Shown here piece by piece: positions 35,297 to 64,000 of a stretch of DNA of 64,000 nt (position 1 is its first letter; each line of letters opens with the position of its first letter). The DNA is from Trichoplax adhaerens (Eukaryota > Animalia > Placozoa). The stretch covers positions 666,695 through 730,694 of the forward strand of contig NW_002060947.1 in assembly GCF_000150275.1 (NCBI RefSeq), read 5' to 3'. The notes below the pieces were generated by a model. It did no database searches, was not told the origin of the DNA, and saw nothing but the letters and a program-made list of their open reading frames with translations. Made by a program: the position numbers and the translations under genes.

Positions 35297-35679
35297 AATA
35301 ATTTTAGAGACAACCAAAAGTACTTCAAAGGCAATTTGGCTATTTTATCTATTCCTAGGATCTAAATTTTGGAGGAAGGAAAATTAGCGACTCCGCTTTA
35401 ATATCGAGAGTAATGGCAAGAGAACAAAAAATATTAATAGTTTCTCTTATGTAAGCAATCCTATTATACCTCCGTTTGAGTTATCAATAGTGATATGTTA
35501 TATTCGATGAGAAATAGTCACAAACTTATCTTAAAATTGCGAAAAGTAATAAATTTTTTGGATTGTCGTTCAATTTATGGACTATAACTCCAGCGTCGTT
35601 CCCATCAAACCAGATGAACCGACAATGATTATTGCCGATCGAATAAATCTCCAATTATAAACTCAGTAGTATTTAGCAT

Positions 35680-44189: not shown

Positions 44190-45160
44190 ATATAATTACA
44201 CTTTCAATTATTACTTTTGGCTTCAGCAGTAAGCCCTATTTAATTAAATTAAAATCTATTGTAATCAATTTTCTCCACACTTGTCTACTAGCATCGAGCT
44301 ACTAATGCCAAAGATCAAATTTTAGGGGTAAATGCTTCAATAGAAAAGGATTTATTATGCAATAGAAGTAGAAATAGTGTCTTTTAAAGTATTAGGATCA
44401 AGAAATTCATCTGATAAAACTAAAATCTATCTTATTCTCTTGAGAACTTATTTCTACAGCTCAGGCCATCAGTATGAATAGAATTCGTAATATCTTTATT
44501 AGCAATCAATCTGAATCTTTTATAGTGCTAAACAAGATGTTTCTGTAGGTATTGGCTTAACTAACATTTTGATAACCCATAGAAACACTACCTTACCAAA
44601 TTTATATTTTGCAGTTACAAGTAAATAGGAATCATCAAGCAGCAGAATCGTGTAACATTTACTATACTGTGTGCTCTAATATTTTTAATTCTTTTTGACT
44701 TATCATGTATGCCATGTTAACTATATTATCAGCTGTCATTACAGTAACATATTGTTCTATTTTATTACTTCCATATTGTAAGAAATTCTTATATTTTGGT
44801 TGTTCTAATGATAGCATTAGCTATGGCTACGGAAAATCATTGTAAACCTTAGCTTATCTTGGGAATGAACGAAATATTGCAATGAGGTAGGCAGCATAGA
44901 AATTTTTACTTCTAACTAGACTCTAGAGAAATAAGTATAACTTTGTTCTATCTGAACACAATTGACTGCCAGTAATATTTTTACTAAATGAAAGTTAATT
45001 TAAAAGCTATCTTTTTATTATACTAGAATTAAAATCTCAGCTAATGCTCAAATCTAAAGAACAAATACCGATAATAATTCGTCAATATCTACGTAAAATC
45101 TTTTTGGCTTATTCTAATAGTGTACCTCTGTATCTCACTTACCATATCAAGCAACTTAAG
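44190..45160 (+). pseudogene. Decayed class A GPCR relic with more canonical TM6/TM7 motifs
   Basis: NIITLSII (~44192), AISMNRIRNI (44465-44494) continuing in one frame through an ECL2 Cys to AVITVTYCSIL (TM5), *LP (44963-44971; WLP), FLAYSNSVPLY (45101-45133). Confidence 0.6.
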
Positions 45161-48100
45161 ATATTGATTCCATGATAACTTCAGATTTAGTGGGCAAGAC
45201 ATTTAAAGATAAATCTTGACCATCCTATAAATTTATTTTATTTCCGTTGTTAATAAATTAATTCAAATCGAATGATTGTGAGTTACCTTAAAACTCTATT
45301 TTGCATCTGTTTAGAATTAAGATTCGTATTTAATCGGCTACTAAGGACAATTAAGAATACCTGAAGATAAATGTTATGCTCTATTTCTGTGGTTTCAACA
45401 AAGCTTCGATTGGGATTTGGATCATTCTCATCTCTAAATGAACGCCTGGACCAACTACAAAGCCAATAGTTACAGGTCAACATTTGAGCATAAAATATCG
45501 ATACGTATAATGGTTACAAGATTAAATTGATACATCAAATTCAAATTCAGCTATTTTAACTAAGTTTGTACTGTCAATAGTTAACCTTTCTAATATATTT
45601 TACATCAATGTAGCTATCTCATAATGATTTTTTGGAAGCTTTAACTTACCGCAGTTTATGGCGAAGGCCTGTACTAGCAGTCAATTGGACAGTACTATCG
45701 CGGTCATTTTTTCTATGTTGGGAGGGAACTTATATGCTTGATAAATCTGCAAGAGCGTGTCAGACGTAACTATATTTAATGACTTTATAAAAGATGAGTG
45801 AAGGCTTTTCAAAGAAATTTGTTTATTAAAGAATCTATGTTGACATTGTTATAATATACTATGTATATAGAAAATAACTTGTAGAATCAACATTTATTAT
45901 TTTACTATACGTATAGCTGGACTTGCCTTATCGTTTTTAATAACTAGGAAAAAGATACTTGCAAGGCCCTATAAATTTTTGAATACAAGAAATTTAAGTG
46001 TAATTAACAGCACTGAAATATGACGTAAATTGAAATAGATTTAACAGATTAAATTTCATGCCCTGATTAGACGGTTAATAATAATATAATAAAGCGAAAT
46101 ACTATCTATATACCCGAAAGTAGATATTAAAATCGTTCTTAGCAAGTATGTAAGAAAAATTACCTGTAGAATTGAGAAAATTGCAAATAGGTATTGCAGT
46201 GCAATTTGATTAAAGATTATCATAGTTGTAAAGAAGGCCCAGCCAAAGGTTAATAGCGGTAGCAAGAATAAGTTTGCGGTAACTGTGTTGCTGTTTATTT
46301 TGATTATGCAAAGTGAAAAATGTGTAATCAAATATTTTTAATATTAATGATTCTTCAATATTAGTGGTACTCTGCTTACTCATATTAATGCTAAAGCGTC
46401 TTAATAATGCAGTAGATTGACTTATTAAATAAAGATCACGGATAGTTGTGCGAATGGTTATACCTTATTGTAAGAAGCTGGTCATCGTATAAACTGTGCG
46501 TTATTTTTTGGTTATTCCGTAAAATTCTGAGTGATGCCACCAAAAGCCAGATGTTGATCTAGTAAAGCAAAAGCATTTTATCATTCAAATGTAAAGCTGT
46601 GTTACATGCTTTTTAATTTGATTGTGTAGGTGCAAGGTCAAATAGGAGCTAGGCAATCCTTTAATATTCAGATATTGATGAAAGAACTAGCTTCTATCAG
46701 AGCATGAAGGAACCGAATTAGAAAAATTGGCCAAAAGTATCTTTGATATTTCTTACTAAAGCCATAATTAGAGCAGGAATTGCAAACGCTAGAACTACAG
46801 GAGGATCTGCAGTTGGCCAACAGCTAAAGAAATATAAATTTTAGCATTACGATTTTCATAATGTACTTAATGTTTCGGATTTATTTTATAGTTCTTTTTC
46901 AACTAAAGTATCAGCAGTAGATCAGCTTACACATTCTTGCTCAAATAATTATTCAAGCCGTATTGCTTGATGACGTAGGCAGCTGTTGTAGTAACAATGG
47001 CAGCTGGAATTACTGGAAGAGGAAAAATTCGTCCGTTACTTATATGGCATTATGGGAATGTGATAGCTACATTTAGATTGCAAAGATAGTTCTATTTGCC
47101 TTTCATCATTTTAGGCTCTGCTGATTGCGACGATAGATTTTCGAAGATATTATATCTTAAAATATTTTACGACTTACTAAACTATTTGCATAGAATATAG
47201 CAGTTATTTTAGTTTCTATTCATCGGGTCTTGAAATCTCTTTTTATACGTTAACTATGATCATGTTTAAAACGATTCGTGAATGATGTCGATTTATTCAT
47301 ACGTACAAATAAACTGTAAAATTATGTGGCGGTCTATAAACGTATAATAAATCAAAATCTCAAATCCAACAGTGAAAATTTCGGCATAATGCACACTGTA
47401 ACACTAGAATGAAACTAAACTAGTAATACTTTAATTCACTTACAGTAAGCCGTTGCCATATAAAATACATTTGACACCTTGGATACTGATGAGTTCACCA
47501 ATTTTCGATAGACGTGAATACTCTGTTGTAATTGGAGCATGAAAGCTGCTAGTACTGTGAAATGCAGTACTATAGCCACCCCAGCGCAGACAGCCTATAC
47601 AGAAAACGGAAAATTTTAGGGCATGAATTAATTTCCAAGCTTCTGTATTGAGAGACTAGCAATAGTAAGGAATTAGTGCCATATTTCACCTGTGACTGTA
47701 CATGCGTAATACCGGTAACAACCATTAAATTTGACAGAATTATATTAACTACAAAGTTGACACTAATTAATGTAAATAAGCTTTGAAGAGACCTAGGAAA
47801 TAGACGAATAAACAAATTTAAGCTATGCCGTTACGGCAATATCATTCCCAAATTTTTATATGATATTGCGTAGATTATAGATTTACTTTGATTGCATTTC
47901 TAATCTACTTATTTGAATACTATAATATATCATCTATTAAAATATTATACAAATTGATCTATACATAAAATAACAAATTATCATAATAATTAGTTATGAT
48001 GCTATTTTTGATGCTCACACCTCCAGTATATCAAGTACGGGATTAAGATTAGGAGTAGAGAAAGGACGACAAATCCACAGCCAATATAAGTAATAATTTC

Positions 48101-51100
48101 TAATTTCAAATCGCTAACCGGTAGCTAAATAAGTCAAAAATTTTGTAATAAATATTTTTGCTTTCATAGAATTAAAATATCTTCTGCTACTTACTATTCT
48201 TATAATGTAGTAATTGAAATTAAAATTAATGACGCAACTTTCATAAATACAGGCTGGAAGTGGTTACTATATCTTAAAGGATTCATATCATGATAGAACT
48301 TACAGTTGTTGGAACCGACCGTATCAAAGTTGTAAAGGTAGTCGTATGATTGCAATAGCAAACAGTGGAGTTAGCACTGGAGTTTGATCCCACCCAACAG
48401 CCAGAACTTAGCCATCCCCAGCCACTGCAATTAAGAATTAACATTAATCCCACAATTGGTTGTATTTAAGGATCAAGGAGTGCACAGAAACTGATCGTTA
48501 GTAGCATACTAAAATCTAGCCAGCTACAATCTCTTTCAATTTGTAAGAAGTTAAATTTTTCTTGTAATGCTATTTTATTGATATATTATTGTAATATATA
48601 CTTTAATATTTACTTTCTTACGATTTCTAGGACATTACCTTGATGAGGATCCCCAGAATGTGCACATGCGCTGGATAGTATTATTTTGGTTGAGAATGGG
48701 CTATTTAATGCATGAAATAATATTTTTAACAATCATATATATTAAAGGTCACAAAGCTACATCAAAATGCGTGTTTGATTGGAGATGCACTATTAATTTA
48801 TAAGGCTTTATTATATTTCAAAAAATGTTGCAATACCTGAGTATTGGCGAAGATTAGTTGAAGAGGAGCTATTAAATTCTGTGAAGATTTCGGATAAAAG
48901 GATGCTGAAAGTACCATTGAATTAATACCAATAGCGTTTCTGGAAGCATTACTTCCCCTATAAAGAATGAAATTATAAATTAAAATTTGCATCCCTTGAT
49001 CACCACAGTCACAGTAATACTAGTTAATTTGGATGAAATACATGATATTAAGTGACAAAACAATCAAGGCTAAGGATATTTCTTCCTTTAAAAAGTTGAT
49101 TTCTATAAGTTACTATTCCATTTTGGACTTAGGTTATATTTACCGTACTGCATATGTTGACGGAAGAATATCTGCAAGGGTCTTAAATGATAATACGATG
49201 CCTTTTGTAACTATAAAAATTATTATAAAGCAAACAAGTACCAAATTTTACTTACTTAACATTATATTATAGCGAGTTGTATTGCATTACAGGCAACTAT
49301 ATGATATTTATTATTTAACTTAAAATGAGCTTAATTGTAAATATTACATCCATAACGCCTAAGGGATAACGCGGATAATTTCAAAGTGACAGGATTACTC
49401 GATTTACTTCCAGCTCCTGAACTGCTTTTGGGATATTGGTAATCGAGAGTAGCTAGTGATCCGGAAAGACGCGCTATCTCTAGATCTATAACAAGGTAAT
49501 TTATACATATGTTGATAATCTTTTCCGAATACCATAGAAGTTCTGCATTGCTATATTATTCATATCATGATATACCAGTAATTAATGATAAAAAGGAAAT
49601 ATAAACCGATGGCAGCATTTTAACATATAGAAATTTGCTCGATAAAACGATAAAGAAATGCAGAAAATGAAATGATCTAGAACTGTGTATCACTGTTGTT
49701 GAAAGGTAAGGTTATCACTTTTATAGCTTCATATGATAACCTAATTCGGTATTTGTAATAGTTATCCTCGATTTGCTTGAAGGTACTTCCGCCTTGCTTG
49801 CAATATTTTCCAGCGTATCCATTAGAGTAAATTCTCCATTTTTATTCTATAGTAATAAGATCGTAAGTTTATACTTCATTTTGAAGACGTCCATAAGTAA
49901 CTAAATTATTACGTAAAGGTATCCGATATAAAATGGTGTTCGCATTAATTTTACTATAATTTCATCAGCATGCAATCGAAATACATATGCATTACCTGTA
50001 TTACATCTTTCCACCCATTTTTATTTTGTAAGTTTAGCAAATTGCCCGTAATGTTGATAACATCCTAATTGATCAAGCATGGATTAGTAAATTTATCCAT
50101 CACATAAATTTGTTCTGCAAAGTGGATTGAAATTCAGTTTTTATCCTTTCCATGCAGCATTGTAACGATTACTATAGCTCAACAAAGTATTAGCTATGAC
50201 ATTGATAATTTCACACTTATGAATTAATTTTAGAATAAACATTAGAAGTAAACTATAACAAACCGTTAGCAATTGTAATGAAATGGAGGTGAACGATTTA
50301 AGCTTTGATAACGTTGACATCGCCGTAGCAAGCTCTCCAGCATACAACTCATTCTTTCGTCTACTAATTGCGTTTTGTAAGGAATTAATTACAGTTTCTG
50401 CTGCGCTTTTATTTGTTGTATCTAGGCTTACGAGCTAAGAATCGTTGAAGATGAATATTAATCAAAGCATAGCATTATGTGCTATAAATAACGGCCATAA
50501 TATATCGGCGAAAGATAACTTACCATATTGGAAAGAGCATTAAAAGACGGTGATATGCATTGGATGGTATCTGTCGGCTTCCAAATAGGTAAACCTGTGA
50601 CTGCTGATTTGGTGCAGGCTTTAGACGCAATTCCTGATGCATGTAGGATAAAAAAGTATTTGTTTCAATGAAACTATGATTAACGCTTTTATTTGGATAT
50701 GTAATAAAATTAGTTGAAAACTAAATTCAAACCTCTAGCCGGTACGGGACAAGGAGCTGTTGCAGTATTACCAACTTGAATTTTCTGCCATCTTATATCA
50801 TTACTAATCACGGTTGGACAGTAGCCGTTCAAGTTATCAGTGCCTAAATAAAATCAATAATTTCGATATTTGAAATAGAATAATAAAAATGGAATTAACC
50901 TTTCATATAGAAATTATTAATTAATTTACTATAAAGTTCTTATTACCAGTTACAGTTACTACGGCTGGCTTAGTAGTAACGGAACTTTTAACATTTGTAA
51001 GACGGCACTGATAAGAACCCGCATCGATAGAACTTATTCTCGAAATGATTAATTCGCTCTTACTGCCATTGGTTACGACTCGGTATGCTGGATTAATTGG

Positions 51101-54100
51101 CAAACCATTTTTGATCCACTGGATCTGGGGAATTGGATCTCCTTTTCCACTACAGTACAGAGTTAGGTTCGATCCAGCTGGTATAAATTGATCTTTCGGT
51201 GATTCGAATACATCAGGTGATTCTGCAAGTAATATAATTTAAATGTTCTTTGGATCAAAGAAATGAATTAATGATAGAAGAGCAAGTCTAGATTAAATTA
51301 TTTCATTAATACTTGCTCTTTCTACGCGCTTACCTGCACTATGAGTTCGATAGATGACTGGCCGACCAAATGGCCCATATCCCATCATCGTCGAAGCTGC
51401 AACTTCGATGGAATAATCGGTCAACGGTTGTAAATTGATTAGATGTGCTTGCATTTGGCCTTTAATTATAATGACTTGAATATTGTTATCTATATTATTT
51501 GAGGAATTACTGCTGAGACCATATCTTATCTTATACGCAATTATATCTCCATTTTGCTGATTTAGTGGGGGTGGATTCCAAACTACTGTGGCTCTTGATG
51601 CCGGCAACTGATCTCCTTTAGCTTGGACGTTTTGAGGTGGTGCTGAAGGAACTGATTCATGGGAAATGAAAGAAGCTATGAGTTTCTAACTAGTCATGCT
51701 GAAGATTTTAAAAATTTTATATAATGATAAAATTTGGAAAAAATTGGTAAGTAAGTTACTGGCAGTTTACGAAGTCAGCATTTTGCGAAATGTCTGATAT
51801 TCTTTAAGCATTTTGCAAAATGACTGATGTCTTACAATTAACTTCGAAATAATAAAGCACTACCGGTAAGGTTCGGCATCTAATCGATTAATTTAACGGT
51901 GATAGACATAGGATTTTAACCTGATTGTGGTGTAGTAAATGAAACTTCGCTTCCATTTGGACCAGGTCCAGCAATGGTGAACGCTCGCAATGAGATCCGA
52001 TATTGAGAATAGAACTGCAAGTTATTGATCATAAGAATTCGAGTCTGATTTTGAGTATCTGTTTGATTTATGAGCACGGTTATGCTACGGGTGGACTGAA
52101 ATTTGTTATTCTGCAAGACCACGTAGAAGCCTTGCAAAATACCATTTATGTTTTCATTTGAAATTATCTGAAGGACAAAATATCAATACCGTAGAGTGTT
52201 AATAAAGTACTGAATATTTGTTTATGGTTATTTATAATTTAATAGATAATCAGGAGTATGCAGAGATGTAGCACTATGACTAAAAAGTACAGCGATAGAC
52301 TATAAAACCTCAGTACTCATTATGTAATACTTAAAATTTTAAATATTTTCCTTATACGCTATGCTACGATCCCTCACGTTTGATTTAATTCGGAGACTAC
52401 TGCCATTAACTATTGAAACTGTTTGAATGTTTGGACCAACACTAGGAGCTATTATTGGATATTGAAATAAATTCAAAAATAATATTTTGTCGTCAATTAA
52501 TAGTCAAAGAAAATTATTAAAATATTATCTTACAGCAAAGAATTTATTGAGATAACTTGGCCAGGATGACCATGATTGTCTATAAATACCTGCTTGATTT
52601 GTAATTACGTTAGCAATGGAGCTATCAGGCCCGAATCCTGCAGTCGTGGCTGCTTTAATTTTGACATAGTAAATCGTATACGGCTTTAATTCATCAATAT
52701 CTATGGATCTTGTTAATCCATCAACTTGAATAGTAGTTGCATTATTTACATTTATTGCATAATATGTAATAGCGTATGTGATGATAACGCCATTGCGATC
52801 CTGTAATTTTGGCGGTTTCCAAGATACTTTAATTATTTTAGAAGTTACAGCATTAACGGTGATGTTTATTGGAGATGATTTTGGTACTAGAAATATTAAT
52901 AAAAGACGAATAAATAGCGTTAATAACGTTAAAAAGTTTGACAACTACATTTATGGTCAGGTGACTGAATAGTAGGAAAGATCATAAATTACGTAATACT
53001 TAGATAAAAATAGCATCATCTGTAATGTTAAGCTTTAATTTTGTCAATTATTAAGTACGACAATTATAGTTAATCTTATTAATGGAAGTACTACCATCTT
53101 CATGGGTAGTAGCTGTAGCAATTGTGCTAGCAGGGCCAATTAAGCCATATTTAATGTTATAGGGAATCACTTGATAGAAATATTGCTGGTTCTCGTTTAG
53201 ATTGGAGGAATAAACTGTAGTACCAACTCCATTATATATAGTAGTATTTCCTCCCGCAGAACTGCTGATTCCTGATGAGCTCTGGCTAATCCACTGGTAT
53301 AATTTATATGCTACCATGCCGTATGGAAGAGTAGGAAGACTCCATTCAATTTTAATAGCAGTTGCATTGTAGGCCAAGGCAATTAAATTGGTAACTGAAT
53401 TTCCTGGAGCTATAATATATTTAGATTTAAAATTAAATGTAGATGTAGAAATTTAATTATACAAGTCTAATTTAAATACTTTCATCGTGTTACTAATGGC
53501 TAATTAACAGTTGATTTCATTCTCTAGTAACGTAATTAATTATAAGATAACTAATCGTATTATAGTATTACTGCTTACCAGCTTGATCTGTTCTTAAGGT
53601 TACAGTAATGTCTTTACCTTTACCGGCAATGTTCTGTGCCCAAATAGTAACATTATAAGAGCTGTATGGAATTAAATCGAAGAAGGTAACTACATTTCTA
53701 TTTGAATTAACAATACATTCGTTGTCGGTTAGACTAAATTGGCATCGATTTATAGTATTTGCTGGTGGATAATTAGTCGTTTCGATAGTATAGTTGGTTA
53801 TAGAGGTATAGCCCGTAAAAGTCGGAGCTTGCCAGGTGATCTTAAAGCCAGACGAAGTAATGTTAAAAACTTGAACATTTACGACGGATGAAGGAGGTTC
53901 TAAATAAAGATCAATTGCAATATCATAGCTTCTTTCAAGTTTCTTAACTTACATTAGATAACATTAAGATAAATGCAAATATTTAATTGAACCTATTCTT
54001 TTGCTTATAAATCTTCATTTGGACAATTAATATTGCCCATATATCGATTACTGTATGCTGAACTTACAAGATGCAACATTTTTTATAGAAAATTGGAAAA

Positions 54101-57100
54101 ATATCTTTCCGTAAATAATATAATAGCGTACCTAGAAGTATTATAATAATACTTTGAGAAGTCGGTGGAGTAAATTGATTTTTGACTCTGCAAACATATG
54201 ATCCAGCGTCACCCGATTTAGTTGAATTTATAGATAATATACTCATAACGGAATTATTTAATGTTTGATGACGCGAAAATGTAGTCATTTTTTGCAGGGT
54301 GCCAGAGCTATCCTTAAACCACTCTACTGTTGGAGTTGGAATACTTGATCCAGTACATTTTAATGTTACCGAGTTACCAATAGGAATAGCAACGCTCTTT
54401 GATATATCTTCGATAATGGGCAAAGCTAACAAGTTATCCATACAAAATTTTTTGTCTTTAATTAGGAAATCTGTATATGCATCGTTCTAAAATATACTCT
54501 TAACACATTATCTTAACACGGTTCTTTTCAGTGCAAATATTACAACTTACTGTAGATGTAAAGTGCGGCTGATGAACTTGTAGAATTTCCCGCAAGGTTA
54601 CCAGCTGAGCACTGATAGATACCTTTATCTTTCAGGGCAACGGCATTAAAGGTAAGGATATCAGAGTTTCTTCTTGATGACATCATGTGCCCATTTTTCA
54701 TCCAATTGATAGCCGGTAGGGGATATCCAGATGCGATGCAAGATAAAGTTACATAGCTACCTTGGCTAACATTTTGACTTTTTGGAGAAACAAGAATCTT
54801 TGGTCTTGCTAAAAATCGTAGAAATTATGTTAATATGTGTCTATTCTTATGATAATTTAGTGAACAAGTTTATACTCTAACACTGTAAATATGGAAAAGT
54901 GCGACCTATGTAAAGTATTGCTATAATGATTGCATCTAGTTGTATGCAGGGTTCTTGCATATAATTCTTCATAGCAGGTTGATAGACAAAATTCATAAAA
55001 TATGAAAGGTAATTTCCAGGATCACGACGATGCTTCTACTGAAATTATCTTAAAAAATTTTACTCTCTAAGATAATTTTCATCCTTACAACTCTAGTAGA
55101 TCTGTTGTCTAACACTTTATAGTGTAAAATTTTATAGAAATTCTTAATGACCATATGATTTCGTTATACGCGCAAGTTTCCATATAAGCTTATGAAAATA
55201 TGATTTAATGTAAAATCGTAGAATACATTTATAGAGGTCAAGCATTCCGTGTTAACCGTTTTTACATTATTAATTCTTAAATAGGACTGATAATGATTGT
55301 AAATATGCTAGGGTATTTGAATGATTGATCATATTAGGCATGTGAATATACGTACTAGTAAATAATATTACTGTATGATTGACGTAAAAATTATGACCCA
55401 TATTTAAGGTAAAATCTGTTGTAAAGAAAAATTGCTTTATGAATTTCTTGCCTAGATTTTAAAATTGATCAGAGAAGAAGAGATAAATGCTAGTAATTTC
55501 TAAACTTACTGTAAATGACAATAGAGGCATTTTGACTCCTTAATGATCCCAATAGATTGCTAAGCCTGCATTGGTATAGGCCTCCATCAGATTTTTGGCT
55601 GTTCTGAATGACAAGACTGCTGGTCGTATATCCGTACGATATTGTGCTACTAATGCTGTAATTGCTAATTATTATTCCATTTTTTAACCAAATTATGGAA
55701 GGGTTAGGGTTTCCAGAACCATTACATTGTATTATTATAGTAGATCCTTCAATTACGGCAATACTTTGCGGAGTTTCGACGATAGTTGGAGGAGCTTTAC
55801 GATAAAGTAACCCAATTAGTATATAGATATTTTACTGTACGCTGAGATCATTTATTATCTATTCATATGCAAAGTAAAATAGCCTAAAGTAAATATTAAG
55901 TTAATAAAATCTTTATCTTTATCGATCACTTACCGTAAACTGTTAGAATATTAGTTATGCTAGTATTTCCGGCGAGATTTGACGATATGCAAACATATTT
56001 GCCAGCGTTACTCCGAGTTACGTTATTCAAATTTAATATCGATAAACCTGGAGTAGATCCATCGTACTTAGATTCAGGAACAATCTTGTCACCTTTTAGC
56101 CAGATAAAAGTGGGTAAAGGATTGCCTGTAGCCTGACAATTGAAGGTCAAGGAAGCTCCTTGAGATAGTGTAATGTTTTGTGGTGTTGAAACTATAATCG
56201 GATAGGCTGTATAGAATTAAATTGCTACATTAGAAGTAGAATTAGCTTTCTAGTTTAAATCGTTGAATTATTCAAATCTTAGAAAGTTACTAATCGATAG
56301 ATAATGATTATTATTCTAAACTTACTGTATATTGTAATGTTGGCCGCTTTGCTTAATACCGTCGTAATGATATTCGTAAAGTTGCATTGATAGATACCCT
56401 GATCATTCCTAGTCGCAGCACTGATGGTTAATATACTGCTGCTAAGTAACTTGCTGTTCATTGCTGTGATACTATAGTTCTGGCTAAGCGGATTACCATT
56501 TTTTAACCAGATTATAGTCGATATAGGTTTGCTAGTAGCATTACAATTTAATTTGATAGGATTCCCTTCAATGATAGCTATATATTTGGGCTGTTGAGTA
56601 ACTATCGTTTCGGCTTTAAGTATATATATATATAATATCAGAAATAGTGATTTATTCAATAGCTCACATTAAGATGTATCAGTGATGTATTACAGTTACC
56701 AATGTTTACTATTATACCAAAAATATGATCTGATAATGAGTTTGAGGTTAGATGGGTACAGTAGGATTATTGAGTCGTAAAATTGCATGTTAATTTCAAT
56801 ATCTATATTTTCCTAAAACTTTGTTATTAGTTTTACTTACCAAGTACTGTTATTTTAATGGTCTTTGTAGTGTTTCCAGCGAGATTACTGCTCACGCATG
56901 TATAGTTTCCTTCATCATTTAATGTTAAGTTAATTAGCCTAAGCACCGACTGATCCACGCTATGTGAATAAAACTGGGATTCCGCAATATTAGCTCCATC
57001 CTTAAGCCAACTGAATTTTGGTTGAGGATTGCCTGTTGCTTGACACAGCATTTCAGTTGAGGTTCCTCGCATTGCAGTGATGCTTTTTGAAGTATTAACA

Positions 57101-60100
57101 ATAACTGGTGAACCTATTATAGTTTTAAAACAAAAAATTGGCAGAAATGAGAAGCAGCACTTATTTTATGAAATTTAAATAAAGCTGTAGATATCATCAT
57201 TTTCTTACTGAAATCGTGAAATATCTTAATTTCACAGTAAAGTAGCTTATAATATTTACTGCATCCAAATATCTAGTATCACTTACTATATATAGTTATA
57301 TTTGCCATGCTACTTATAGCGGATCCGATGGTATTGGTGCAGTTGCATTGATATGAGCCGTAATCTTTGGCAGTGCTATTGTAAATTGTCAGTCTGCTTC
57401 TTATATACCCATTGGATATAAAACTTGCGATATTGTGGTTAACACTTAGCGAAAATCCATTTTTTAGCCAACTAATAGTGGCTATTGGCTTGCTTGTCGC
57501 GTTACAATGCAATATGATTGACATCCCTTCTATTACTCCTGTACTGAGTGGCTGAACAACAATAACCGGAAAAACTAGTAGTAAAATCATGAAAAGAATT
57601 AGATAATTCTGAAGAAGATATTATTTCTACGAGACATTATAGAGCATGAATCAAACTCATGCACAATAGAAAATGGGAATGAGTTTCTGTTCTTTATTTG
57701 ATTTCCTCGTCATTTAATAGCTAAATATGATCCAATGATCTGCTATCATATTTAAATTATAATTACCTAATACGATGATCTTTACTGGGCTACTTGTTAC
57801 ATTTCCGGCTACGCTTGTACTTAAACAGGTATAATTTCCTTCGTCGTTCATGGTAACAGAACTGATCGTCAGTAAAGACAAGTTCGGTGATGGAGATGAT
57901 GTTACAGAATTATTAATTTTTTGACCGTTCTTGAACCAAAAAAAATTTGGTGGGGGATAATTGATGGATCTACAACTCAATGTCAAAACTTTTCCAGTTA
58001 CTGCAAATCTGGTACCAGAACTAATGATTGCAATGGGTTTTTCTAAGCAGAAGGAAATAACATATAGCACAATGTTATTATCGTAATATTCTGTACTCTA
58101 AAGTTTGCCAAATTCTGTCAGATTTGATACCATAATATTCATTCAATAATCACAATTACGATAGAATTGCAGTTACGCTACATGATCTATTGAATCATAC
58201 AAATTTTAACGTCGATCTGTAGGTTATTGAGTGATATAGGATGACTTACCATAAATTTTAAGCGTTGCATTTCTACTTAGTGATGATCCTATCGGATTTG
58301 TAAATTTGCACTGATATGCACCATTGTCTGCTAGCTGGACACCATAAATAATTAATAGACTGCTAGCTATCAGGTTATCGACACTGCTTACTATGGTATA
58401 GTTGTGATTATTTCCAACAAAATTATTGTTTTTAAACCATGTAACATTAGATATAGGATCGCTTATTCCACTACAATATAATGTAATATTTTGTCCCTCA
58501 ATAGCCGCTATATCGGTAGGGTTATTGTTGATTGCCGTCTTATCTAAATAGAAAAGGTGGCCAAAAGTTAGAAATAAAATTTTATGATAAGAGATCTCAG
58601 AAGATTGGAACTTTATTAAGTACTCAACTTAAAACGAAAATTAATGCTATTCTAAAAGGTGAACATTATTAAACAGTCCTTGTAACGCTTAAATTAGATT
58701 TTCATGAAATTATTATCTTCATGATTGGATGTAAGATTTAAAATTAATCCTATCCTGTGAAGGCTTAGAACTGTATCAATTCATAAGCTGATAGTAAGTT
58801 GACTTAAAAAACTGTGAAAAGATTTATTACTTACAATGTATGATCACGACTGCATCATTACTAGTTGTATTGCCCACAAAATTTGTTGCAATACAGGAGT
58901 AATTGCCGGTAATTTCTTTAGTTACGCTGCTCAACATTAAAATCGACGTATTAATAGATGAAGAGAACATTTTTGAGTCTAAAATTTGCTTATTTTTTTG
59001 CCACACGAAGGCTGGTGCAGGGTTAGACGTAGCTTGACAGGTCAGATTAATTGAGGAACCTTCCGTTATCATCAGGCTTTTCGGTGATCTCGTAATTACA
59101 GGTTTTGCTATTAGAAAAAATGCAGAGGTGAAAGAAATTTTGTCACACATGTAATTATTAAAATTCTAAGTAAGAAGAAGATAACCATGCTATAAGCTTT
59201 GAAAAATCTGGTATATAATTTATAAAATTTGCATAACTTGCTGTCTAAGCTGTAATCTAGACTGAAGTAATGAAAGTAGTAATTCTTTAACTGATAGCAA
59301 CAGATTACAACTTGGCTACTATGGTTATAAAAACACTATAATCATATATTTGAATTAATAGGCTACAGAAGCAATGTCTTTGCTACTTAGTTATCGATAC
59401 AATAATTTCAAATCAGCTATTTTGAGCAGCATAATAGTAATTGTTGTGCAGATACTCCTAAGTGATTAACAGTGCGGATATAATATGTGCATTGGCTGTT
59501 TATTAAAGTCCAAATTTACTTACTGTATAGCGTTACGATTGCATTACTACTCTGTGTACTTCCTATACTGTTGGAAAAATTACACTGGTATAGGCCAGTA
59601 TCATTAAGATTTGCATTTTGGATGGTGATATTGCTGGAAATAGAGAATGCAGTATAGGAGCTACTAAAGTCGCCTTTCTCGACTGGTTGTCCAGATTTCA
59701 ACCAAGAGACTTGAGGTAATGGGTTTCCAGTTCCACTGCAAAGTAACGTGATCGAATGTCCTTCAGTTGCTCCAGTATTACTAGGATTTAGTTTAATAAC
59801 TGGAGAATCTATCAGTTTAATAGAGAAACGACATTTAAAATAATTAATCGATTAGCTTTCCACTGGCATAAATTATGCTTCTGCTCAACTTTGATATTTA
59901 CGTGATATCAGCCTCTATGAAAGCAAGTTTTTTAAGCATAATGTCGCTGCTAAATGCGACTTAAGTTACTATGAAGGTGGTAATCAGATAAACACATTAA
60001 ATCATAAGCAAAGTTTTATATATCTAGAGCTGCGGTTGGAATTTATACTTACAGTATACAGTAATGAAAGCTGCCATACTTGAAGCATTTCCAAATGAGT

Positions 60101-63100
60101 TCGAAGAAAAGCAAACATAATTTCCAACGTCTGTAATCTTGATAAGAGGTATTTGAAGCTGCGATAAGCCTGAAGTTGAAGACGAGTAAAGACTACTATC
60201 AACTAAGTAACCGTCTTTAATCCATTGGATAGTTGGTAGCGGCTTGCCGCTAGCTTGGCAGGAAAGCATTAAGGTATTCCCCTGGATTACAGTGGTATTC
60301 ACAGGTGAAATAATAATTGCAGGTTTTGCTACGAGAAAATATAATGAAGTATATAGGAATTGAATTTCTTGTAAAGCAAATTCAAATTGTAACTGAAGAT
60401 GTTTGAATAGAAGCTGAATAACAGCAATAACATAGGCTTACTGTAGATAATCAAAATACCAACAAGACTACTCGTATTTCCAGCAATATTTTCGCTGTAG
60501 CATGTATAATTTCCGGCATCTTGAGGCGTTAAATTAGTTAAATATAGATTGGAGCCACCTGATATCGATGATTGGTGTATAGCATTAATCAGATTTCCAT
60601 CTTTGAACCATTTAATCGATGGAATAGGATATCCGTTGGCTTGACAACTAATATTAATAGCTATTCCTTGTATCGCGGTATAACTTGTGAGTGGAGTTAT
60701 GACTGTCGGTTTAACTATGCATTATAACATTGAAAATGGATATGTTTGAATGATTAAGATGATACATTAAATTTACAAAAGAGATATTATGAAATAACTA
60801 CAGATGATAGAGATTGACTGAAAGATAGTATCGTATCAAGCAAGTATTTGAAATACTTGGTACTTACGATAGATGGTAATAGTAGCAGCAAGCGATACTT
60901 TTGTTCCGGCACTATTGCTAAAACTGCACCAATATCTACCCATATCATAACTTTTGATATTTTGGATAGTCAGTTCACTGCTTCGGTAGCTACCAACAAC
61001 AGCATTGATTACTGTGTAATTGTTTACAACTTGTCCATTCTTTATCCAGGCAATAGTTGGTATCGGATTTCCAGTTCCATTACAGAGTAATTTTATTGAT
61101 TGGCCAATCAGTGCTGCCATATTACTTGGATTCGTGATGATTATAGGTAAGCCTGTACCCAAAATTGAAAGGCAATTTAGGGTCCGATAAGCTTTTAATG
61201 TAAAATGTTATCACAGAAACCGTTCAAGGTTTTAATATGAGAGATTCTATTATAGTCACAGTTAGTCTAGTTAATCATTCGTGATATCCTGCGCGTATGC
61301 GCTCGTATGCTACGCATACCAGCAAAGTTGCAAGTAAGTCCAGAAATCTCTGGGCTCATCTAGGTTTATTTCCGAATTAAAATTTATACCTTGGATAAAC
61401 TTAATAATTGTTATATTTATCCTAACTTACTTAACACAGTTAGAGTAGCTATACTGCTTGTTGCATTTCCAATACCATTAGAACAGAAGCAAACATAATT
61501 GCCGGCGTCTCCGATAACTACATTGTTTAGCTGTAATTTAATTTCACTGGATGAGAGAATGAGATATCTAGTGCTGTTAATTGTAACTTGATTTTTGAGC
61601 CAAATGCAAGTAGGAGTAGGCAGACCTTCTCCTTTACAATGAAAATTGGTAGAACTCCCTTGATTTACTTGAACATTTTGAGGATTGATAACAATACGTG
61701 GTATTTCTAATGTAGAAATTAGATAGGAAATTCATAATATTAGTTAAATGTACGGCGCTATCAACAGACATTTAGTGACAATTTAACATGCTAGATAGTC
61801 ATTTATAAAATTTAATAATAACCAAATACGTCGACATAAGCAGATTCAGTTTCATTCAGTCCTGCAGGATTGGAAAATCTACAACGATACCATCCTATGT
61901 CTTTTTCAGCTACTTTGGGAAGTGTTAGTTGACTTTCGCCATTGGAATTTGTTGTGGTGTAATTGCTGATATGAGTGGAGCCTTTGAGCCATATAACGTT
62001 AATTTGCTGATAGTTACTGCTTGCTCGACATCTTAGTATCACAGTTTGACCCTCAGATACATTTTTTGAACTTGGATGCTGGTTGATGTACAAATAATCT
62101 AGAAAAATAATTAAATTGATAATACATACCCTTCAGTCTTAACGGTTATACGATTACAAGAACTAAAGGAAGTATCTTGTTTGCTACGAAAGTAACGACT
62201 ATTTCTTTATAACGATTATTCAGTTAATTAGAATACTGACCATCCAATTCAAGGGATAGCTTAATTCCAGCTAGGAATCCAAAGGACAACCCTATTGGAC
62301 CATAACCATATTGGATTAAGGAAAATTGGACGCTAGAACTGTTGTGATTGAGCACATGTCTACCTCCATGGATGAAGACATGTGCCACCGCATATGTGCC
62401 GTTGCTAGTTTGAACTGTAACCCAACGAACATGTTGAAGGGCGCTACCATCTAATCTTAATCCATTTTTTTGGCTATCCAAAATTGCGATATTAACAAAG
62501 CGGTCAATAATCTCATCGCCATCAGTGTCTACGCTGTAAAATACATAACTCGACTGATATTGACTAATTGATGGTACAAGAATCATCATTGGATCTGAAA
62601 TAGAATGATCGGCATTTTGCCCTTTACTGTATTGAGCTACTGCACAAGGCTTGCTGCATGTTAAATACGTTCCTGTATCGCTAGCTAGATGAAATTCAAG
62701 AAATGAACCCTGAGAAATAATATGAATTTGTCCATTTAAATGCATTCGAATGCTTGTATTATCGTAAGCAGCAACAACACGAAATATATCACCAGCTGTT
62801 CTATCAGCGAAAGTTGTCAATACATAATTCTTGCCAAGAGAATTTGTTGGTAATAGCTGCTCTACAAGATATTCGCAATCAATTATTCTCACAGGTACTA
62901 ATGCACATCGATTGCCAGATTGAACGGCGACTTTCTTATTTGAGTTGATGATTGTTCCGGTTATGTCTTGATTATATCCGAAGTAGAAACTTTGCGATTT
63001 CTGTAAATTGACGATCAGATGATTACTTCGAGAATAAATGGTACCTAGATAGTTAACGTTTCGCGGGAAAATAATGCTGAGTTGGGTTTGATCTTGAGAT

Positions 63101-63509
63101 GCAGTAACCAAAAATTGAGACCTTTGGTACGGTGTATACGTTGCAATAACATATTGTTTGCCAAAAGCTGTTGTCGGTAAAGCAAGATATCCATCAGCTG
63201 ATAATGGGTGTACATGATATCCTTCAACAATGATATCTTGATCCGATGTCACAAGAACAGTTTTGCTACTTACTCCATTTACACTATTTTCGAGTGATAT
63301 TGGTAGCGGAATTTCTCGGTAGCTTTGTGCACTAATACTAAAAAGGCTAATGGATTTATCATAATTATTAGTAATAGTCACTTGCGCAGCTTGATTTAAA
63401 GTTGTAATAACGACAAAAGGAAAATGTGAACCATGTTGGTTTGTCGTAGCAGCCTGCATGTATCCAAGATAAAATTTCTTACCGAAATTAGTTACCGATG
63501 TCTTTAATG
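45156..63509 (-). CDS. Giant adhesion GPCR, first exon(s) not located: IgGFc-binding (FCGBP-N) - 16x Ig - 5x FN3 - Ig - HormR - GAIN/GPS - 7TM - short tail; 45 exons traced, ~3,200 aa
   Basis: Phase-consistent exon chain: 62241-63509 (IgGFc-binding); 16 Ig exons 54132-62098; FN3 exons 51334-53899; Ig 50947-51222; HormR 50524-50843 (YCP..RW..APCP..ASKAC..IW..QC); GAIN 48304-50434 ending CTFW..WLSSGC..VCYCNHTTTF; 7TM exons 45927-48124 (ITYIGC, VCAGVAIVLHF, NVCW, AFAIP, LLPLL..W, LQYLFAIFSILQG); tail exons to TAA at 45156. One frame inconsistency lies in exon 45650-45746. Confidence 0.88.
45747..45926 (-). other. GC-AG intron after the TM7 exon of the adhesion GPCR
   Basis: The donor AAG|GCAAGT matches the GC-donor consensus. 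Splicing to ttgcag| gives IKNDK-IYQAYK, a plausible helix 8. Confidence 0.6.
54132..62098 (-). repeat. Sixteen tandem I-set Ig exons, one domain per symmetric phase-1 exon
   Basis: Exons 61823-62098, 61431-61706, 60868-61152, 60442-60714, 60053-60328, 59524-59808, 58835-59107, 58250-58543, 57767-58042, 57287-57574, 56841-57113, 56326-56613, 55934-56206, 55510-55794, 54551-54808, 54132-54425. All lengths are multiples of 3, each with C..W.K..GxYxC. Confidence 0.9.
62241..63509 (-). other. IgGFc-binding protein N-terminal (FCGBP-N) domain exon of the adhesion GPCR
   Basis: 1269-bp phase-1 exon with NFGKKFYLGYMQ, SADGYLALPTTAFGKQY, DITGTIINSNKKVAVQSGNRCA, CEYLVEQLLPTNSLGKNY, DIFRVVAAYDNT, KPCAVAQYSKG..SDPMMILVPSISQY and SFGFLAG. 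Confidence 0.85.
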
Positions 63510-64000
63510 CTATAGTAAAATAAATTTAAATTGTATCAATTAACAAAATAAAACTCTTCGTATGATATTGTAATAGTAATGTTGATATGATTTACTGATG
63601 TTCGCTCTAAGAGCACTAGTTCAGCCAGAGAATATATTAGTAGCAGTGATGCGAGATAATTTTGCAATTAAGAAAGGTTAACACTAAAGAACTAGAATAA
63701 AAGTCCGATAAAGGACTACTAGATATATCTAATAATCCATGATCCAGCTAATAAATGCTCTACAACAGTTGATATGCTCTAACGGAGATAGCAAATAATA
63801 CTATTTAGTAATGTCGTCTTAAAACTATTTGAATTAATGACAGCGATGTCGCACTGCTGATTTAGGTACCGCAAGAACTTTTCAGCCTACAGTATATTAG
63901 AGACTTCTCAATTGAAGATTTGCGAATTAATACATCATAGTCATTTAATATAGTCCCTTCTGTGGTGACAAGAATGACGAAAAATTCAGTCATTTGCTAC

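What the first reader, a model, noticed from the sequence alone, without database searches (positions are those of the whole stretch)
45156..63509. Adhesion GPCR with an unusual ectodomain: FCGBP-type IgGFc-binding domain on a 16-Ig/5-FN3 stalk
Seen: a continuous phase-consistent exon chain links an IgGFc-binding N-terminal domain (a single 1269-bp symmetric exon), 17 Ig domains, 5 FN3 domains, HormR, GAIN/GPS and a secretin-like 7TM. Established: FCGBP-N is best known from secreted mucus-associated proteins, and Ig+FN3 stalks typify cell-adhesion molecules and receptor phosphatases. I know of no vertebrate adhesion GPCR subfamily with this combination. Inference: an exon-shuffled long-reach receptor that could couple mucus, microbe or substrate binding, or shear force, to G-protein signalling.
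Basis: partly seen in the sequence, partly recalled or inferred. Interest (0 to 1): 0.8.

Follow-up and report, generated by a model that had tools for sequence, protein, structure and literature searches.

The report
Placozoan adhesion GPCR, FCGBP-N head
This is one real, intact gene of the placozoan Trichoplax adhaerens for a receptor of about 3,100 residues: an FCGBP-type head on a stalk of 17 Ig and 5 FN3 domains, joined to an adhesion-GPCR core. It is one of about nine such genes in this genome and is undescribed as far as I could search, but it is a variant of a known receptor class.

Summary
On the minus strand, 42 phase-compatible exons read without a stop for 3,131 codons: signal peptide (just outside the window), IgGFc_binding/FCGBP_N (Pfam E 4e-68), 16 Ig, 5 FN3, Ig, HormR, GAIN/GPS, 7TM. 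Only the tail 3' of 45906 is unresolved.

The 7TM and GPS exons are weak alone. Profiles built with paralogue exons hit only adhesion GPCRs at the top of the PDB list (ADGRD1 TM3 5e-13, ADGRG6 GPS 6e-13).

The genome is Trichoplax adhaerens, not human. The public model TRIADDRAFT_56180 covers only exons 1-4, so the architecture is missing from that annotation.

The gene is not unique. Nine of 16 IgGFc loci in this genome have a GPS 5-25 kb downstream on the same strand (P about 4e-16). Seven loci, this one included, show the same domain order with stalks of 9 to 26 domains. The scan already reported two paralogues on other DNA (s1-744536, s1-734989).

The Ig-to-HormR intron is 103 nt, phase 1, and conserved in position in five paralogues. 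A two-gene reading is therefore unlikely.

No RNA was available. The ligand, GPS cleavage and G-protein coupling are inferred. IgG binding by FCGBP_N is itself disputed.

Verdict: a new variant of a known kind, of moderate interest.

The parts
62241..63509 (-). Exon 2: FCGBP_N / IgGFc_binding head domain (422 codons, phase 1 in and out). Exon 1 (signal peptide, MKMKIKFRTIILIITIYYLLLWPLSSE) lies outside the window at extended coordinates 64319-64238 (L002:238-319; G000:C1410:730932-731013).
   Evidence: Pfam PF17517 E 4.1e-68 over the full profile. Acceptor tag|CAT at 63509 and donor ATG|gtcagt at 62241. The exon 1/2 junction is identical in the public model TRIADDRAFT_56180. AF2 model pLDDT 93.6, all-beta.
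54132..62098 (-). Exons 3-18: sixteen Ig domains, one per exon, all phase 1-1. Coordinates: 62098-61823, 61706-61431, 61152-60868, 60714-60442, 60328-60053, 59799-59524, 59107-58835, 58543-58250, 58042-57767, 57574-57287, 57104-56841, 56613-56326, 56206-55934, 55794-55510, 54808-54551, 54425-54132. A few acceptors have equally phased alternatives 9-39 nt away.
   Evidence: Pfam Ig_3/I-set E 1e-13 to 1e-19 for each open piece. GTAAGT-type donors sit at each domain end. The chain is stop-free. Ig3-Ig14 alternate two Ig types.
51334..53899 (-). Exons 19-24: five FN3 domains. Coordinates: 53899-53579, 53403-53092, 52886-52590, 52448-52378 plus 52167-51921 (one domain split by a phase-0 intron), 51642-51334.
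   Evidence: Pfam fn3 E 1.2e-11, 0.008, 1.2e-14, 8.7e-4 (second half of the split domain) and 5.4e-12. Splice chain.
50947..51222 (-). Exon 25: the 17th, membrane-proximal Ig domain, directly before HormR.
   Evidence: Pfam I-set E 9e-16. An Ig exon directly before HormR is present in six paralogues. The intron to HormR is 103 nt, phase 1, and conserved in position in five of them.
50524..50843 (-). Exons 26-27: HormR (HRM) domain, 50843-50733 and 50633-50524.
   Evidence: Pfam HRM E 6.5e-5, 23.7 bits, for the first half. The genome scan gives 26.2 bits with its neighbour. The family exon profile hits only HormR regions of ADGRL3, ADGRB2, BAI3 and CELSR1, weakly (best E 0.016). Both exons are conserved in seven or eight paralogue loci.
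48304..50434 (-). Exons 28-34: GAIN domain including GPS. Coordinates: 50434-50264, 50064-49996, 49846-49741, 49210-49144, 48957-48837, 48700-48639, 48424-48304 (GPS exon: ...CYCNH-T|TTFTTLI...).
   Evidence: Pfam GPS 27.3 bits against a cut-off of 22.5. The family GPS-exon profile hits ADGRG6 at 6e-13, and all 22 hits are adhesion GPCRs. Every one of these exons is conserved in paralogues. A phase-consistent chain runs through all conserved frames.
45906..48124 (-). Exons 35-42: seven-transmembrane domain. Coordinates: TM1 48124-48021, TM2 47792-47690, TM3 47594-47444, TM4 47012-46931, TM5 46823-46757, TM5 end/ICL3 46558-46440, TM6-TM7 46290-46164, TM7 end 45968-45906.
   Evidence: The TM3 family profile hits ADGRD1 at 5.3e-13, with the top 24 hits all adhesion GPCRs and secretin receptors below them. 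The TM6-7 profile hits ADGRD1 at 6.3e-6 at residues 217-248. The own TM3 exon scores Pfam 7tm_2 E 0.0027. Hydropathy peaks are in TM1, 2, 3, 5 and 6. Donor and acceptor positions are shared with paralogues.
45156..45905 (-). Unresolved cytoplasmic tail / 3' end.
   Evidence: Ab initio enumeration gives many near-equal chains. The best chain ending at 45156 scores 6.7 against 11.4 for others. No paralogue conservation was found after TM7.

Best explanation
The locus is a single, intact Trichoplax adhaerens gene of at least 42 exons spanning about 18.4 kb. It encodes an adhesion (class B2) GPCR of about 3,100 residues.

Shown here:
- The domain order is signal peptide, FCGBP_N head, 16 Ig, 5 FN3, Ig, HormR, GAIN with a GPS, then a 7TM of the adhesion/secretin type.
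- The domain exons are almost all phase 1-1, which is the signature of exon shuffling and tandem exon duplication.
- The gene belongs to a family of about nine head-capped receptors in this genome. These share the membrane-proximal Ig-HormR-GAIN-7TM module and differ in stalk length.

Inferred from how solved adhesion GPCRs work:
- The head at the tip of a stalk of 22 beta-sandwich domains binds an extracellular partner. My estimate of the extended length is roughly 80-100 nm.
- The GAIN domain may self-cleave at H-T|T. His at -2 and Thr at +1 are present, but -1 is Thr rather than the usual Leu.
- Pulling on or engaging the N-terminal fragment would expose the tethered peptide TTFTTLI. That peptide would activate the 7TM and, through it, G proteins.

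The ligand of the head is unknown. Substrate, mucus or biofilm material is a guess, not a result.
For: - Pfam, exon by exon: IgGFc_binding 4e-68, 17 Ig, 5 FN3, HRM, and GPS above its cut-off.
- All N-terminal introns are phase 1 with GTAAGT-type donors. The 25 N-terminal exons read 2,546 codons without a stop.
- A phase-consistent chain runs through 17 paralogue-conserved C-terminal exons, giving 3,131 codons without a stop in all.
- The signal-peptide exon and the first three junctions are identical to the public model TRIADDRAFT_56180.
- Family exon profiles hit adhesion GPCR structures: TM3 5e-13, TM6-7 6e-6, GPS 6e-13.
- There are 74 N-glycosylation sequons in the 2,864-residue ectodomain against 2 in the 7TM part.
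- The same order, head to 7TM, is found in six further loci. GPS lies downstream of 9 of 16 IgGFc loci, binomial P 3.6e-16.
- The Ig-to-HormR intron is 103 nt, phase 1, and lies at the same position in five paralogues.
- A collinear orthologue of exons 2-9 exists on metagenome contigs, 47-66% amino-acid identity.
Against: - No RNA evidence could be examined. The only public protein found for the locus is a 636-residue fragment covering exons 1-4.
- The whole spliced protein was never scored against Pfam or any database, because joined models were not to be searched.
- The 7TM of this copy is derived. TM3 reads FMLQLQQS where relatives have F-W-M-L-x-E-G, and TM6 reads PLLTFGW where relatives have PLLGVGW. 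Its 7tm_2 exons missed the genome-wide scan at E 0.1.
- The -1 residue of the GPS is Thr, not Leu.
- The GAIN model is short, at about 238 residues.
- The 3' end is open.
- The head has no structural neighbour of known function.
Confidence: 0.8

Rival explanations
1. There are two adjacent genes: a secreted FCGBP_N-Ig-FN3 protein (hemicentin-like) followed by a small HormR-GAIN-7TM receptor. The reader, and I, merged them.
For: - The public annotation breaks the locus. TRIADDRAFT_56180 ends after exon 4.
- The Trichoplax sp. H2 relative of paralogue G is named 'Hemicentin-2, partial' and carries no 7TM.
- No transcript was seen.
Against: - Only 103 nt separate the last Ig exon from the HormR exon, too little for a terminator, a promoter and a leader exon.
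- The HormR exon is entered in phase 1 and has no Met in its open frame.
- The same junction, phase and position recur in five paralogues, and the whole order recurs in six further loci.
- TRIADDRAFT_56180 ends by reading through a canonical GTAAGT donor.
- The H2 model is cut by the end of its contig.
Confidence: 0.05
2. It is one gene, but it works mainly as a long adhesion or anchoring molecule. The 7TM would serve as a membrane anchor with little or no G-protein signalling in this particular copy.
For: - This copy has lost the TM3 Trp and the Glu-Gly that paralogues E and H share with ADGRD1, and it has Thr for Gly in the TM6 PLLG motif.
- Its 7TM exons were not picked up by the genome-wide 7tm_2 scan.
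- The tail may be only about 13 residues long.
Against: - All 7TM exons remain open, correctly phased and recognisably conserved.
- The Stachel-like TTFTTLI, the His -2/Thr +1 pair and the four GPS cysteines are kept.
- Adhesion GPCRs tolerate wide variation in these motifs (general knowledge, not tested here).
Confidence: 0.12
3. The locus is a decaying or unexpressed duplicate (pseudogene) within an expanding family.
For: The family is large, with recent near-identical copies on small contigs. This copy's 7TM is the most derived among those aligned.
Against: - 9.4 kb of coding sequence in 42 exons has no stop or frameshift, and splice sites are intact.
- Exons 2-9 are conserved at 47-66% amino-acid identity, in order, in a divergent relative.
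Confidence: 0.03

Closest known systems
Paralogous FCGBP_N-capped adhesion GPCRs of the same genome (earlier scan findings s1-744536 and s1-734989; loci A-H here)
   Same: FCGBP_N head(s) at the N-terminus, a variable stalk, then Ig-HormR-GAIN/GPS-7TM. Intron positions and phases are shared in the C-terminal module.
   Different: Stalk composition differs. This gene has one head, 16 Ig, 5 FN3 and 1 Ig. This copy has H-T|T at the GPS and the most derived TM3 and TM6.
Vertebrate ADGRA2/ADGRA3 (GPR124/GPR125), and more loosely ADGRF5 and ADGRL/ADGRB/CELSR
   Same: An Ig domain directly before HormR-GAIN-7TM, as in ADGRA (from my own knowledge). The HormR, GPS and 7TM profiles match ADGRL3, ADGRB2, ADGRG6 and ADGRD1 structures.
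   Different: There are no LRRs. A stalk of 22 Ig/FN3 domains and an FCGBP_N head are not reported for any vertebrate subfamily. Subfamily phylogeny was not done.
Placozoan C-type-lectin adhesion GPCRs (Kamm et al. 2019, PMC6321704)
   Same: Both are lineage-specific families in Trichoplax that fuse a recognition domain to a secretin/adhesion 7TM. Kamm et al. propose that these couple pattern recognition to GPCR signalling.
   Different: The ectodomain there is made of CTLDs. Neither an FCGBP_N head nor an Ig/FN3 stalk is mentioned in that paper.
Sponge adhesion GPCRs with Ig, fn3 and HRM domains (Krishnan et al. 2014, PMC4302439, Fig. 4 legend)
   Same: Ig/fn3/HRM/GPS/7TM combinations occur in an early-branching animal.
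   Different: No FCGBP_N domain is reported there. That Pfam family was announced for release 30.0, after the study (PMC4948705). Orthology was not tested.
FCGBP and other FCGBP_N proteins (Lang et al. 2016, PMC4948705)
   Same: A full-length FCGBP_N domain sits at the extreme N-terminus after a signal peptide. That paper says this is the usual position, and it lists Placozoa among phyla whose FCGBP_N proteins lack VWD.
   Different: There are no VWD-C8-TIL units. The protein is membrane-bound through a 7TM rather than secreted into mucus. That paper's main text holds neither 'GPCR' nor 'Trichoplax', and its supplement could not be read.

Membership tests
Adhesion GPCR (class B2) | Seven-transmembrane domain of the secretin/adhesion (7tm_2) type | tested here: met
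   Profiles of the TM3 and TM6-7 exons (own plus 7 paralogues) hit ADGRD1 at 5.3e-13 and 6.3e-6 at the matching helices. The top 24 TM3 hits are all adhesion GPCRs. The own TM3 exon alone scores Pfam 7tm_2 E 0.0027, 17.5 bits, below the 20.6 cut-off. The joined 7TM was not scored.
Adhesion GPCR (class B2) | GAIN domain with a GPS motif immediately N-terminal to TM1 | tested here: met
   Pfam GPS 27.3 bits against a cut-off of 22.5. The family GPS-exon profile hits ADGRG6 at 6e-13, and all 22 hits are adhesion GPCRs. The GPS exon is the exon directly before TM1. The full GAIN fold was not modelled because its exons could not be joined for a tool.
Adhesion GPCR (class B2) | Autoproteolysis consensus H-L|T/S/C and actual cleavage | tested here: inconclusive
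   The sequence reads C-Y-C-N-H-T|T-T-F. His -2 and Thr +1 are present, and -1 is Thr. Paralogues E, F and H have H-L|T, and G has H-M|T. Cleavage itself needs an experiment.
Adhesion GPCR (class B2) | Tethered agonist (Stachel) T-x-F-x-x-L-[MI] after the cleavage site | tested here: met
   TTFTTLI follows the GPS His-Thr. The +1 Thr and +3 Phe are invariant in all nine aligned family members. Agonist activity was not tested.
Adhesion GPCR (class B2) | Ectodomain and 7TM encoded in one transcript | not testable with these tools
   No RNA data were reachable. Support is indirect: the 103-nt phase-1 intron, paralogue conservation and an unbroken frame. The earlier scan notes say two paralogues are transcribed. 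I did not check that.
FCGBP (IgGFc-binding mucus protein) | N-terminal FCGBP_N / IgGFc_binding domain | tested here: met
   PF17517 E 4.1e-68, profile positions 1-297 of 297.
FCGBP (IgGFc-binding mucus protein) | Repeated VWD-C8-TIL assemblies | tested here: not met
   No VWD, C8 or TIL hit in any of the 40 open pieces scanned against Pfam. The gene is not an FCGBP orthologue and shares only the head domain.
FCGBP (IgGFc-binding mucus protein) | Binding of IgG Fc | not testable with these tools
   IgG binding is reported as not reproducible even for FCGBP (PMC11796319, citing PMC8267560).
Hemicentin (public name given to the Trichoplax sp. H2 relative of paralogue G) | N-terminal VWA, long Ig array, G2F/EGF/fibulin-type C-terminus, secreted | tested here: not met
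   Only the Ig array is shared. No VWA, G2F or EGF hit was found in this gene. The C-terminus is HormR-GAIN-7TM.
ADGRA subfamily (GPR124/125) | LRR + Ig + HormR + GAIN + 7TM | tested here: not met
   Ig-HormR-GAIN-7TM is present but there is no LRR hit. No 7TM phylogeny was done.

The most novel reading that the evidence does not exclude
The FCGBP_N-capped receptors would be a placozoan-specific set of surface 'feelers' of graded length (9 to 26 stalk domains). They would report contact with secreted mucus, substrate or microbial biofilm to G-protein signalling in an animal without neurons, and so help control ciliary gliding and feeding pauses. FCGBP_N is otherwise found in mucus proteins and in surface proteins of gliding bacteria (PMC4948705), and its function is unknown. 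These receptors would then give that domain its first signalling read-out.
Probability: 0.12. Interest if true: 0.75.

Novelty: new variant of a known kind. Interest (0 to 1): 0.45.

Why it matters
Adhesion GPCRs are defined by what their ectodomains touch. Here a domain of unknown function is wired directly to a GAIN-7TM signalling core, about nine times over, with stalks of different length. That domain, FCGBP_N, is abundant in vertebrate mucus and in gliding bacteria. The wiring gives a tractable way to ask what FCGBP_N binds. It adds a second lineage-specific receptor family to the placozoan C-type-lectin GPCRs. It also shows that the public Trichoplax adhaerens gene model found for this locus covers only its first four exons, so surveys based on that model would miss the architecture. 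It does not reveal a new kind of system, because domain-shuffled adhesion GPCRs are a known theme in invertebrates.

Tried and rejected
All database searches used single exons by reference. Joined translations were made only inside scripts, to count stops, length and sequons.
2. An unconstrained ab initio exon DP put the TM3 exon in the wrong frame and invented an 89-nt exon plus a chain of micro-exons. It was replaced by a chain constrained to paralogue-conserved frames.
4. The search for homologous proteins with P0026 residues 1-450 gave only itself and one bacterial protein. The Ig17 exon as query gave nothing, so no transcript-derived fragment across the Ig/HormR junction was found.
5. The look-up of encoding contigs for P0153 returned 'not on record'.
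6. Fold search of the head was unproductive. Foldseek hits had TM-scores of about 0.1. The best VIA-align Z was 7.6 over 106 residues (Thermotoga TM1070), and the remaining hits were generic beta-sandwiches. No functional inference was drawn.
7. The tree of IgGFc domains could not test a single origin of the fusion, because the non-genomic rows are fragments of unknown architecture.
8. dN/dS against the metagenome orthologue was not attempted, because I judged synonymous sites saturated at 63% amino-acid identity.
9. Literature: no paper holds 'adhesion GPCR' with 'IgGFc', 'Trichoplax' with 'IgGFc-binding protein', or 'TRIADDRAFT_56180'.
10. The open 74-codon piece 49334-49555 is not conserved in any paralogue and was left out of the model.
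11. The contig is not human. It is Trichoplax adhaerens.

Full report
**Source and strand.** The window is G000:C1410:666695-730694, in a 105.6-Mb, 1,414-contig, roughly 30% GC genome. Proteins identical or nearly identical to its products carry the names Trichoplax adhaerens and Trichoplax sp. H2. The contig is placozoan, not human. The gene lies on the minus strand, and nothing of note was seen on the plus strand of 45-64 kb.

**Checking the observation.** Stop-free pieces of the minus strand were scanned against Pfam one by one, by reference.
- IgGFc_binding (PF17517) matches over its whole profile in 62227-63525, E 4.1e-68.
- Sixteen consecutive pieces between 62132 and 54067 are Ig domains, E 1e-13 to 1e-19.
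- Five FN3 domains follow. Three are strong, one is weak (E 0.008), and one is split over two exons.
- After the FN3 block come a further Ig (E 9e-16), the first half of an HRM domain (E 6.5e-5), and a GPS motif (27.3 bits against a cut-off of 22.5).
- The 7TM is cut into eight small exons, and only the TM3 exon reaches 7tm_2 on its own (E 0.0027).

**Exon chain, N-terminal part.** Every junction from the head exon to the HormR exon has a compatible pair of splice sites. Nearly all leave one nucleotide over (phase 1) and use GTAAGT-like donors exactly at the domain ends. Its acceptor joins, in phase, an 82-nt exon 729 nt upstream and just outside the window (extended 64319-64238). That exon encodes MKMKIKFRTIILIITIYYLLLWPLSSE, a plausible signal peptide. 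No further coding-looking piece lies in the 10 kb upstream on this strand. The 25 exons read 2,546 codons with no stop.

**Exon chain, C-terminal part.** An unconstrained exon finder made frame errors here. I therefore first found which pieces are conserved in paralogues. I then asked for a chain that passes through all 17 conserved pieces in their conserved frames. One exists: two HormR exons, seven GAIN exons ending in the GPS exon, and eight 7TM exons. Donor and acceptor positions in the TM3 to TM7 region are shared with the paralogues.
- In all, 42 exons give 3,131 codons with no stop.
- The ectodomain of 2,864 residues holds 74 N-glycosylation sequons, against 2 in the 7TM part.
- What follows the last TM7 exon (45968-45906) is not resolved. 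The exon can read through to a stop at 45897-45899, or small exons may follow.
- The joined protein was never sent to any search tool. Joined translations were only counted inside scripts.

**Is the C-terminal half an adhesion GPCR?** Exon alignments of this gene with seven or eight paralogues were searched as profiles against PDB sequences.
- TM3 exon: ADGRD1 5.3e-13. The 24 best hits are all adhesion GPCRs, with secretin-family receptors below them.
- TM6-7 exon: ADGRD1 6.3e-6, at residues 217-248.
- GPS exon: ADGRG6 6e-13, with all 22 hits adhesion GPCRs.
- First HormR exon: only HormR regions of ADGRL3, ADGRB2, BAI3 and CELSR1, weakly (best E 0.016).
- The GPS reads C-Y-C-N-H-T|T-T-F-T-T-L-I. 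It keeps His at -2, Thr at +1 and a Stachel-like T-x-F-x-x-L-I, with Thr instead of the usual Leu at -1.
- This copy is the most derived of those aligned. TM3 has FMLQLQQS where paralogues E and H and ADGRD1 have F-W-M-L-x-E-G. TM6 has PLLTFGW where they have PLLGVGW.

**A family, not a singleton.** Whole-genome scans with the Pfam models found 23 IgGFc_binding exons, 58 GPS hits, 122 7tm_2 pieces and 10 HRM hits.
- Nine of 16 independent IgGFc loci have a GPS 5-25 kb downstream on the same strand. The chance per locus is 0.007, and the binomial P is 3.6e-16.
- I fetched eight of these loci and mapped them with HMMs built from this gene's own exons.
- Six of them plus the present one show head(s), Ig(n), FN3(n), Ig, HormR, GAIN, GPS and TM1-7 in that order.
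- Their stalks range from 9 domains (C: 8 FN3 + Ig) to 26 (E: 17 Ig + 9 FN3). Two loci have two heads (A, B).
- Loci F and H are more divergent.
- The intron between the last Ig and HormR is 81-195 nt, phase 1, at the homologous position in A, B, D and G, and 103 nt in this gene. Locus C has a 52-nt, phase-1 intron at a slightly different acceptor.

This argues strongly against two adjacent genes. The gap cannot hold a terminator, a promoter and a leader exon, and the HormR exon has no Met in its frame.

**Earlier notes of this scan.** After I had mapped the loci, the scan's notes showed that two paralogues were already reported on other DNA. These are s1-744536 (two heads, six Ig, nine FN3, which matches my locus A) and s1-734989 (a head on an EGF stalk, which matches the position of my locus F). 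Both were judged lineage-specific variants and said to be transcribed. I did not test transcription.

**Public annotation and relatives.**
- The only public protein found for this locus is TRIADDRAFT_56180. It is 636 residues long, 100% identical, and annotated 'uncharacterized, Ig-like domain-containing'.
- It uses my exon 1/2, 2/3 and 3/4 junctions and then reads through the exon-4 donor to a stop. The public model therefore covers only the first four exons of my chain.
- The Trichoplax sp. H2 relative of paralogue G is 'Hemicentin-2, partial'. It has head + 14 Ig + 3 FN3 and is cut by the end of its contig.
- In a crude local scan (hydrophobic-window count and a GPS regex) none of the top 150 of 7,425 library hits to the head showed a GPS motif or five or more hydrophobic segments. 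The three exceptions were repeat proteins whose segments are spread along their length.
- Two metagenome contigs carry a collinear orthologue of exons 2-9: 63% identity in the head and 47-66% in the Ig exons. In a tree of head domains, this gene pairs with that orthologue (100/99), and several paralogues pair with other anonymous fragments. This suggests the family predates the split of two placozoan-like lineages.

**The head domain.**
- An AlphaFold2 model from a 46-sequence alignment is confident (pLDDT 93.6, pTM 0.93) and all-beta.
- Foldseek gives only spurious global matches (TM about 0.1). VIA-align gives at best Z 7.6 on 106 residues, otherwise generic beta-sandwiches. The structure therefore gives no functional clue.
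- Lang et al. 2016 defined FCGBP_N. They found it nearly always N-terminal, in many invertebrate architectures and in surface proteins of gliding bacteria, and they list Placozoa among phyla where it occurs without VWD domains (PMC4948705).
- IgG binding by FCGBP could not be reproduced (PMC11796319). The Pfam name should therefore not be read as a function.

**Literature on novelty.** Domain-shuffled adhesion GPCRs are known in sponges (Ig, fn3, HRM; PMC4302439) and in placozoans (28 CTLD-bearing secretin/adhesion GPCRs; PMC6321704). No paper in the held library holds 'adhesion GPCR' together with 'IgGFc', or 'Trichoplax' together with 'IgGFc-binding protein'. Two recent placozoan cell-atlas papers do not mention such receptors.

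**How it most likely works.**
- Shown: the architecture, the intact frame, the GPS/Stachel sequence features, and membership of the 7TM in the adhesion class.
- Inferred from solved adhesion GPCRs: the head binds a partner at the end of a long, glycosylated, rod-like stalk. The GAIN domain holds, and possibly cleaves, the tethered peptide. Ligand engagement or force exposes that peptide and activates the 7TM.
- Trichoplax glides on cilia over secreted mucus and feeds on biofilms (PMC6737977 abstract). Substrate, mucus or microbe sensing is therefore plausible, but wholly untested.

**Verdict.** This is a new variant of a known kind, already seen by this scan at two paralogous loci, and of moderate interest.

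Noticed in passing
window 54132-62098 (Ig3-Ig14): The Ig exons alternate between two types, one of which carries a short 'N-x-N-Y-x-I' insert. Mean identity is 38.9% at lag 2 against 32.2% at lag 1 and 31.4% at lag 3. This suggests growth of the stalk by duplication of a two-Ig unit.
   Followed up: partly
L026:1919-7222 and L027:2335-4547 (ENA metagenome contigs): These contigs carry a collinear orthologue of exons 2-9 of this gene, with 63% amino-acid identity in the head and 47-66% in the Ig exons. It comes from an unnamed organism in a metagenome sample, presumably another placozoan lineage.
   Followed up: partly
G000:C1369 (62 kb) and G000:C1337 (29 kb); loci L028-L030, L035-L036: These small contigs carry IgGFc exons nearly identical to those of loci C (C1402:1634853) and B (C1397:482085/485296), with tree branch lengths of 0.03-0.09. 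They are likely haplotigs or very recent duplicates, which inflates the count of 23 head exons.
   Followed up: partly
G000:C1412:787581-801744 (L031-L034): Four tandem IgGFc exons occur in two alternating, almost identical types (t1 like t3, t2 like t4), with no GPS nearby. They probably belong to a multi-head secreted protein, perhaps of the CUB/EGF type seen in library protein P0006.
   Followed up: no
G000:C1410:1175681-1176595 (L038): This is the closest in-genome relative of this gene's head domain (sister clade, support 91/91), yet no GPS hit lies nearby. It is either a head-bearing gene without a 7TM or one with a GPS too divergent for the scan.
   Followed up: no
window 34178-35344 (-) and L002:8834-9998 (+): A 389-codon single-exon open frame looks like a class A GPCR about 10 kb downstream of this gene (already noted by the scan as s1-760367). 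TM-rich open frames with an LNLSISD-type TM2 lie about 9 kb upstream on the other strand. The receptor gene thus sits among rhodopsin-type GPCR genes.
   Followed up: no
window 49334-49555 (-): A 74-codon open piece lies inside the 530-nt intron between two GAIN exons. It is not conserved in any paralogue. It was left out of the model but could be a lineage-specific insert or an alternative exon.
   Followed up: partly
window 61420-61731 / public protein P0153: The public model TRIADDRAFT_56180 ends by reading through the GTAAGT donor of exon 4 (…LTVLSKLG, then a stop). This shows that the 2008 annotation truncates this locus.
   Followed up: yes
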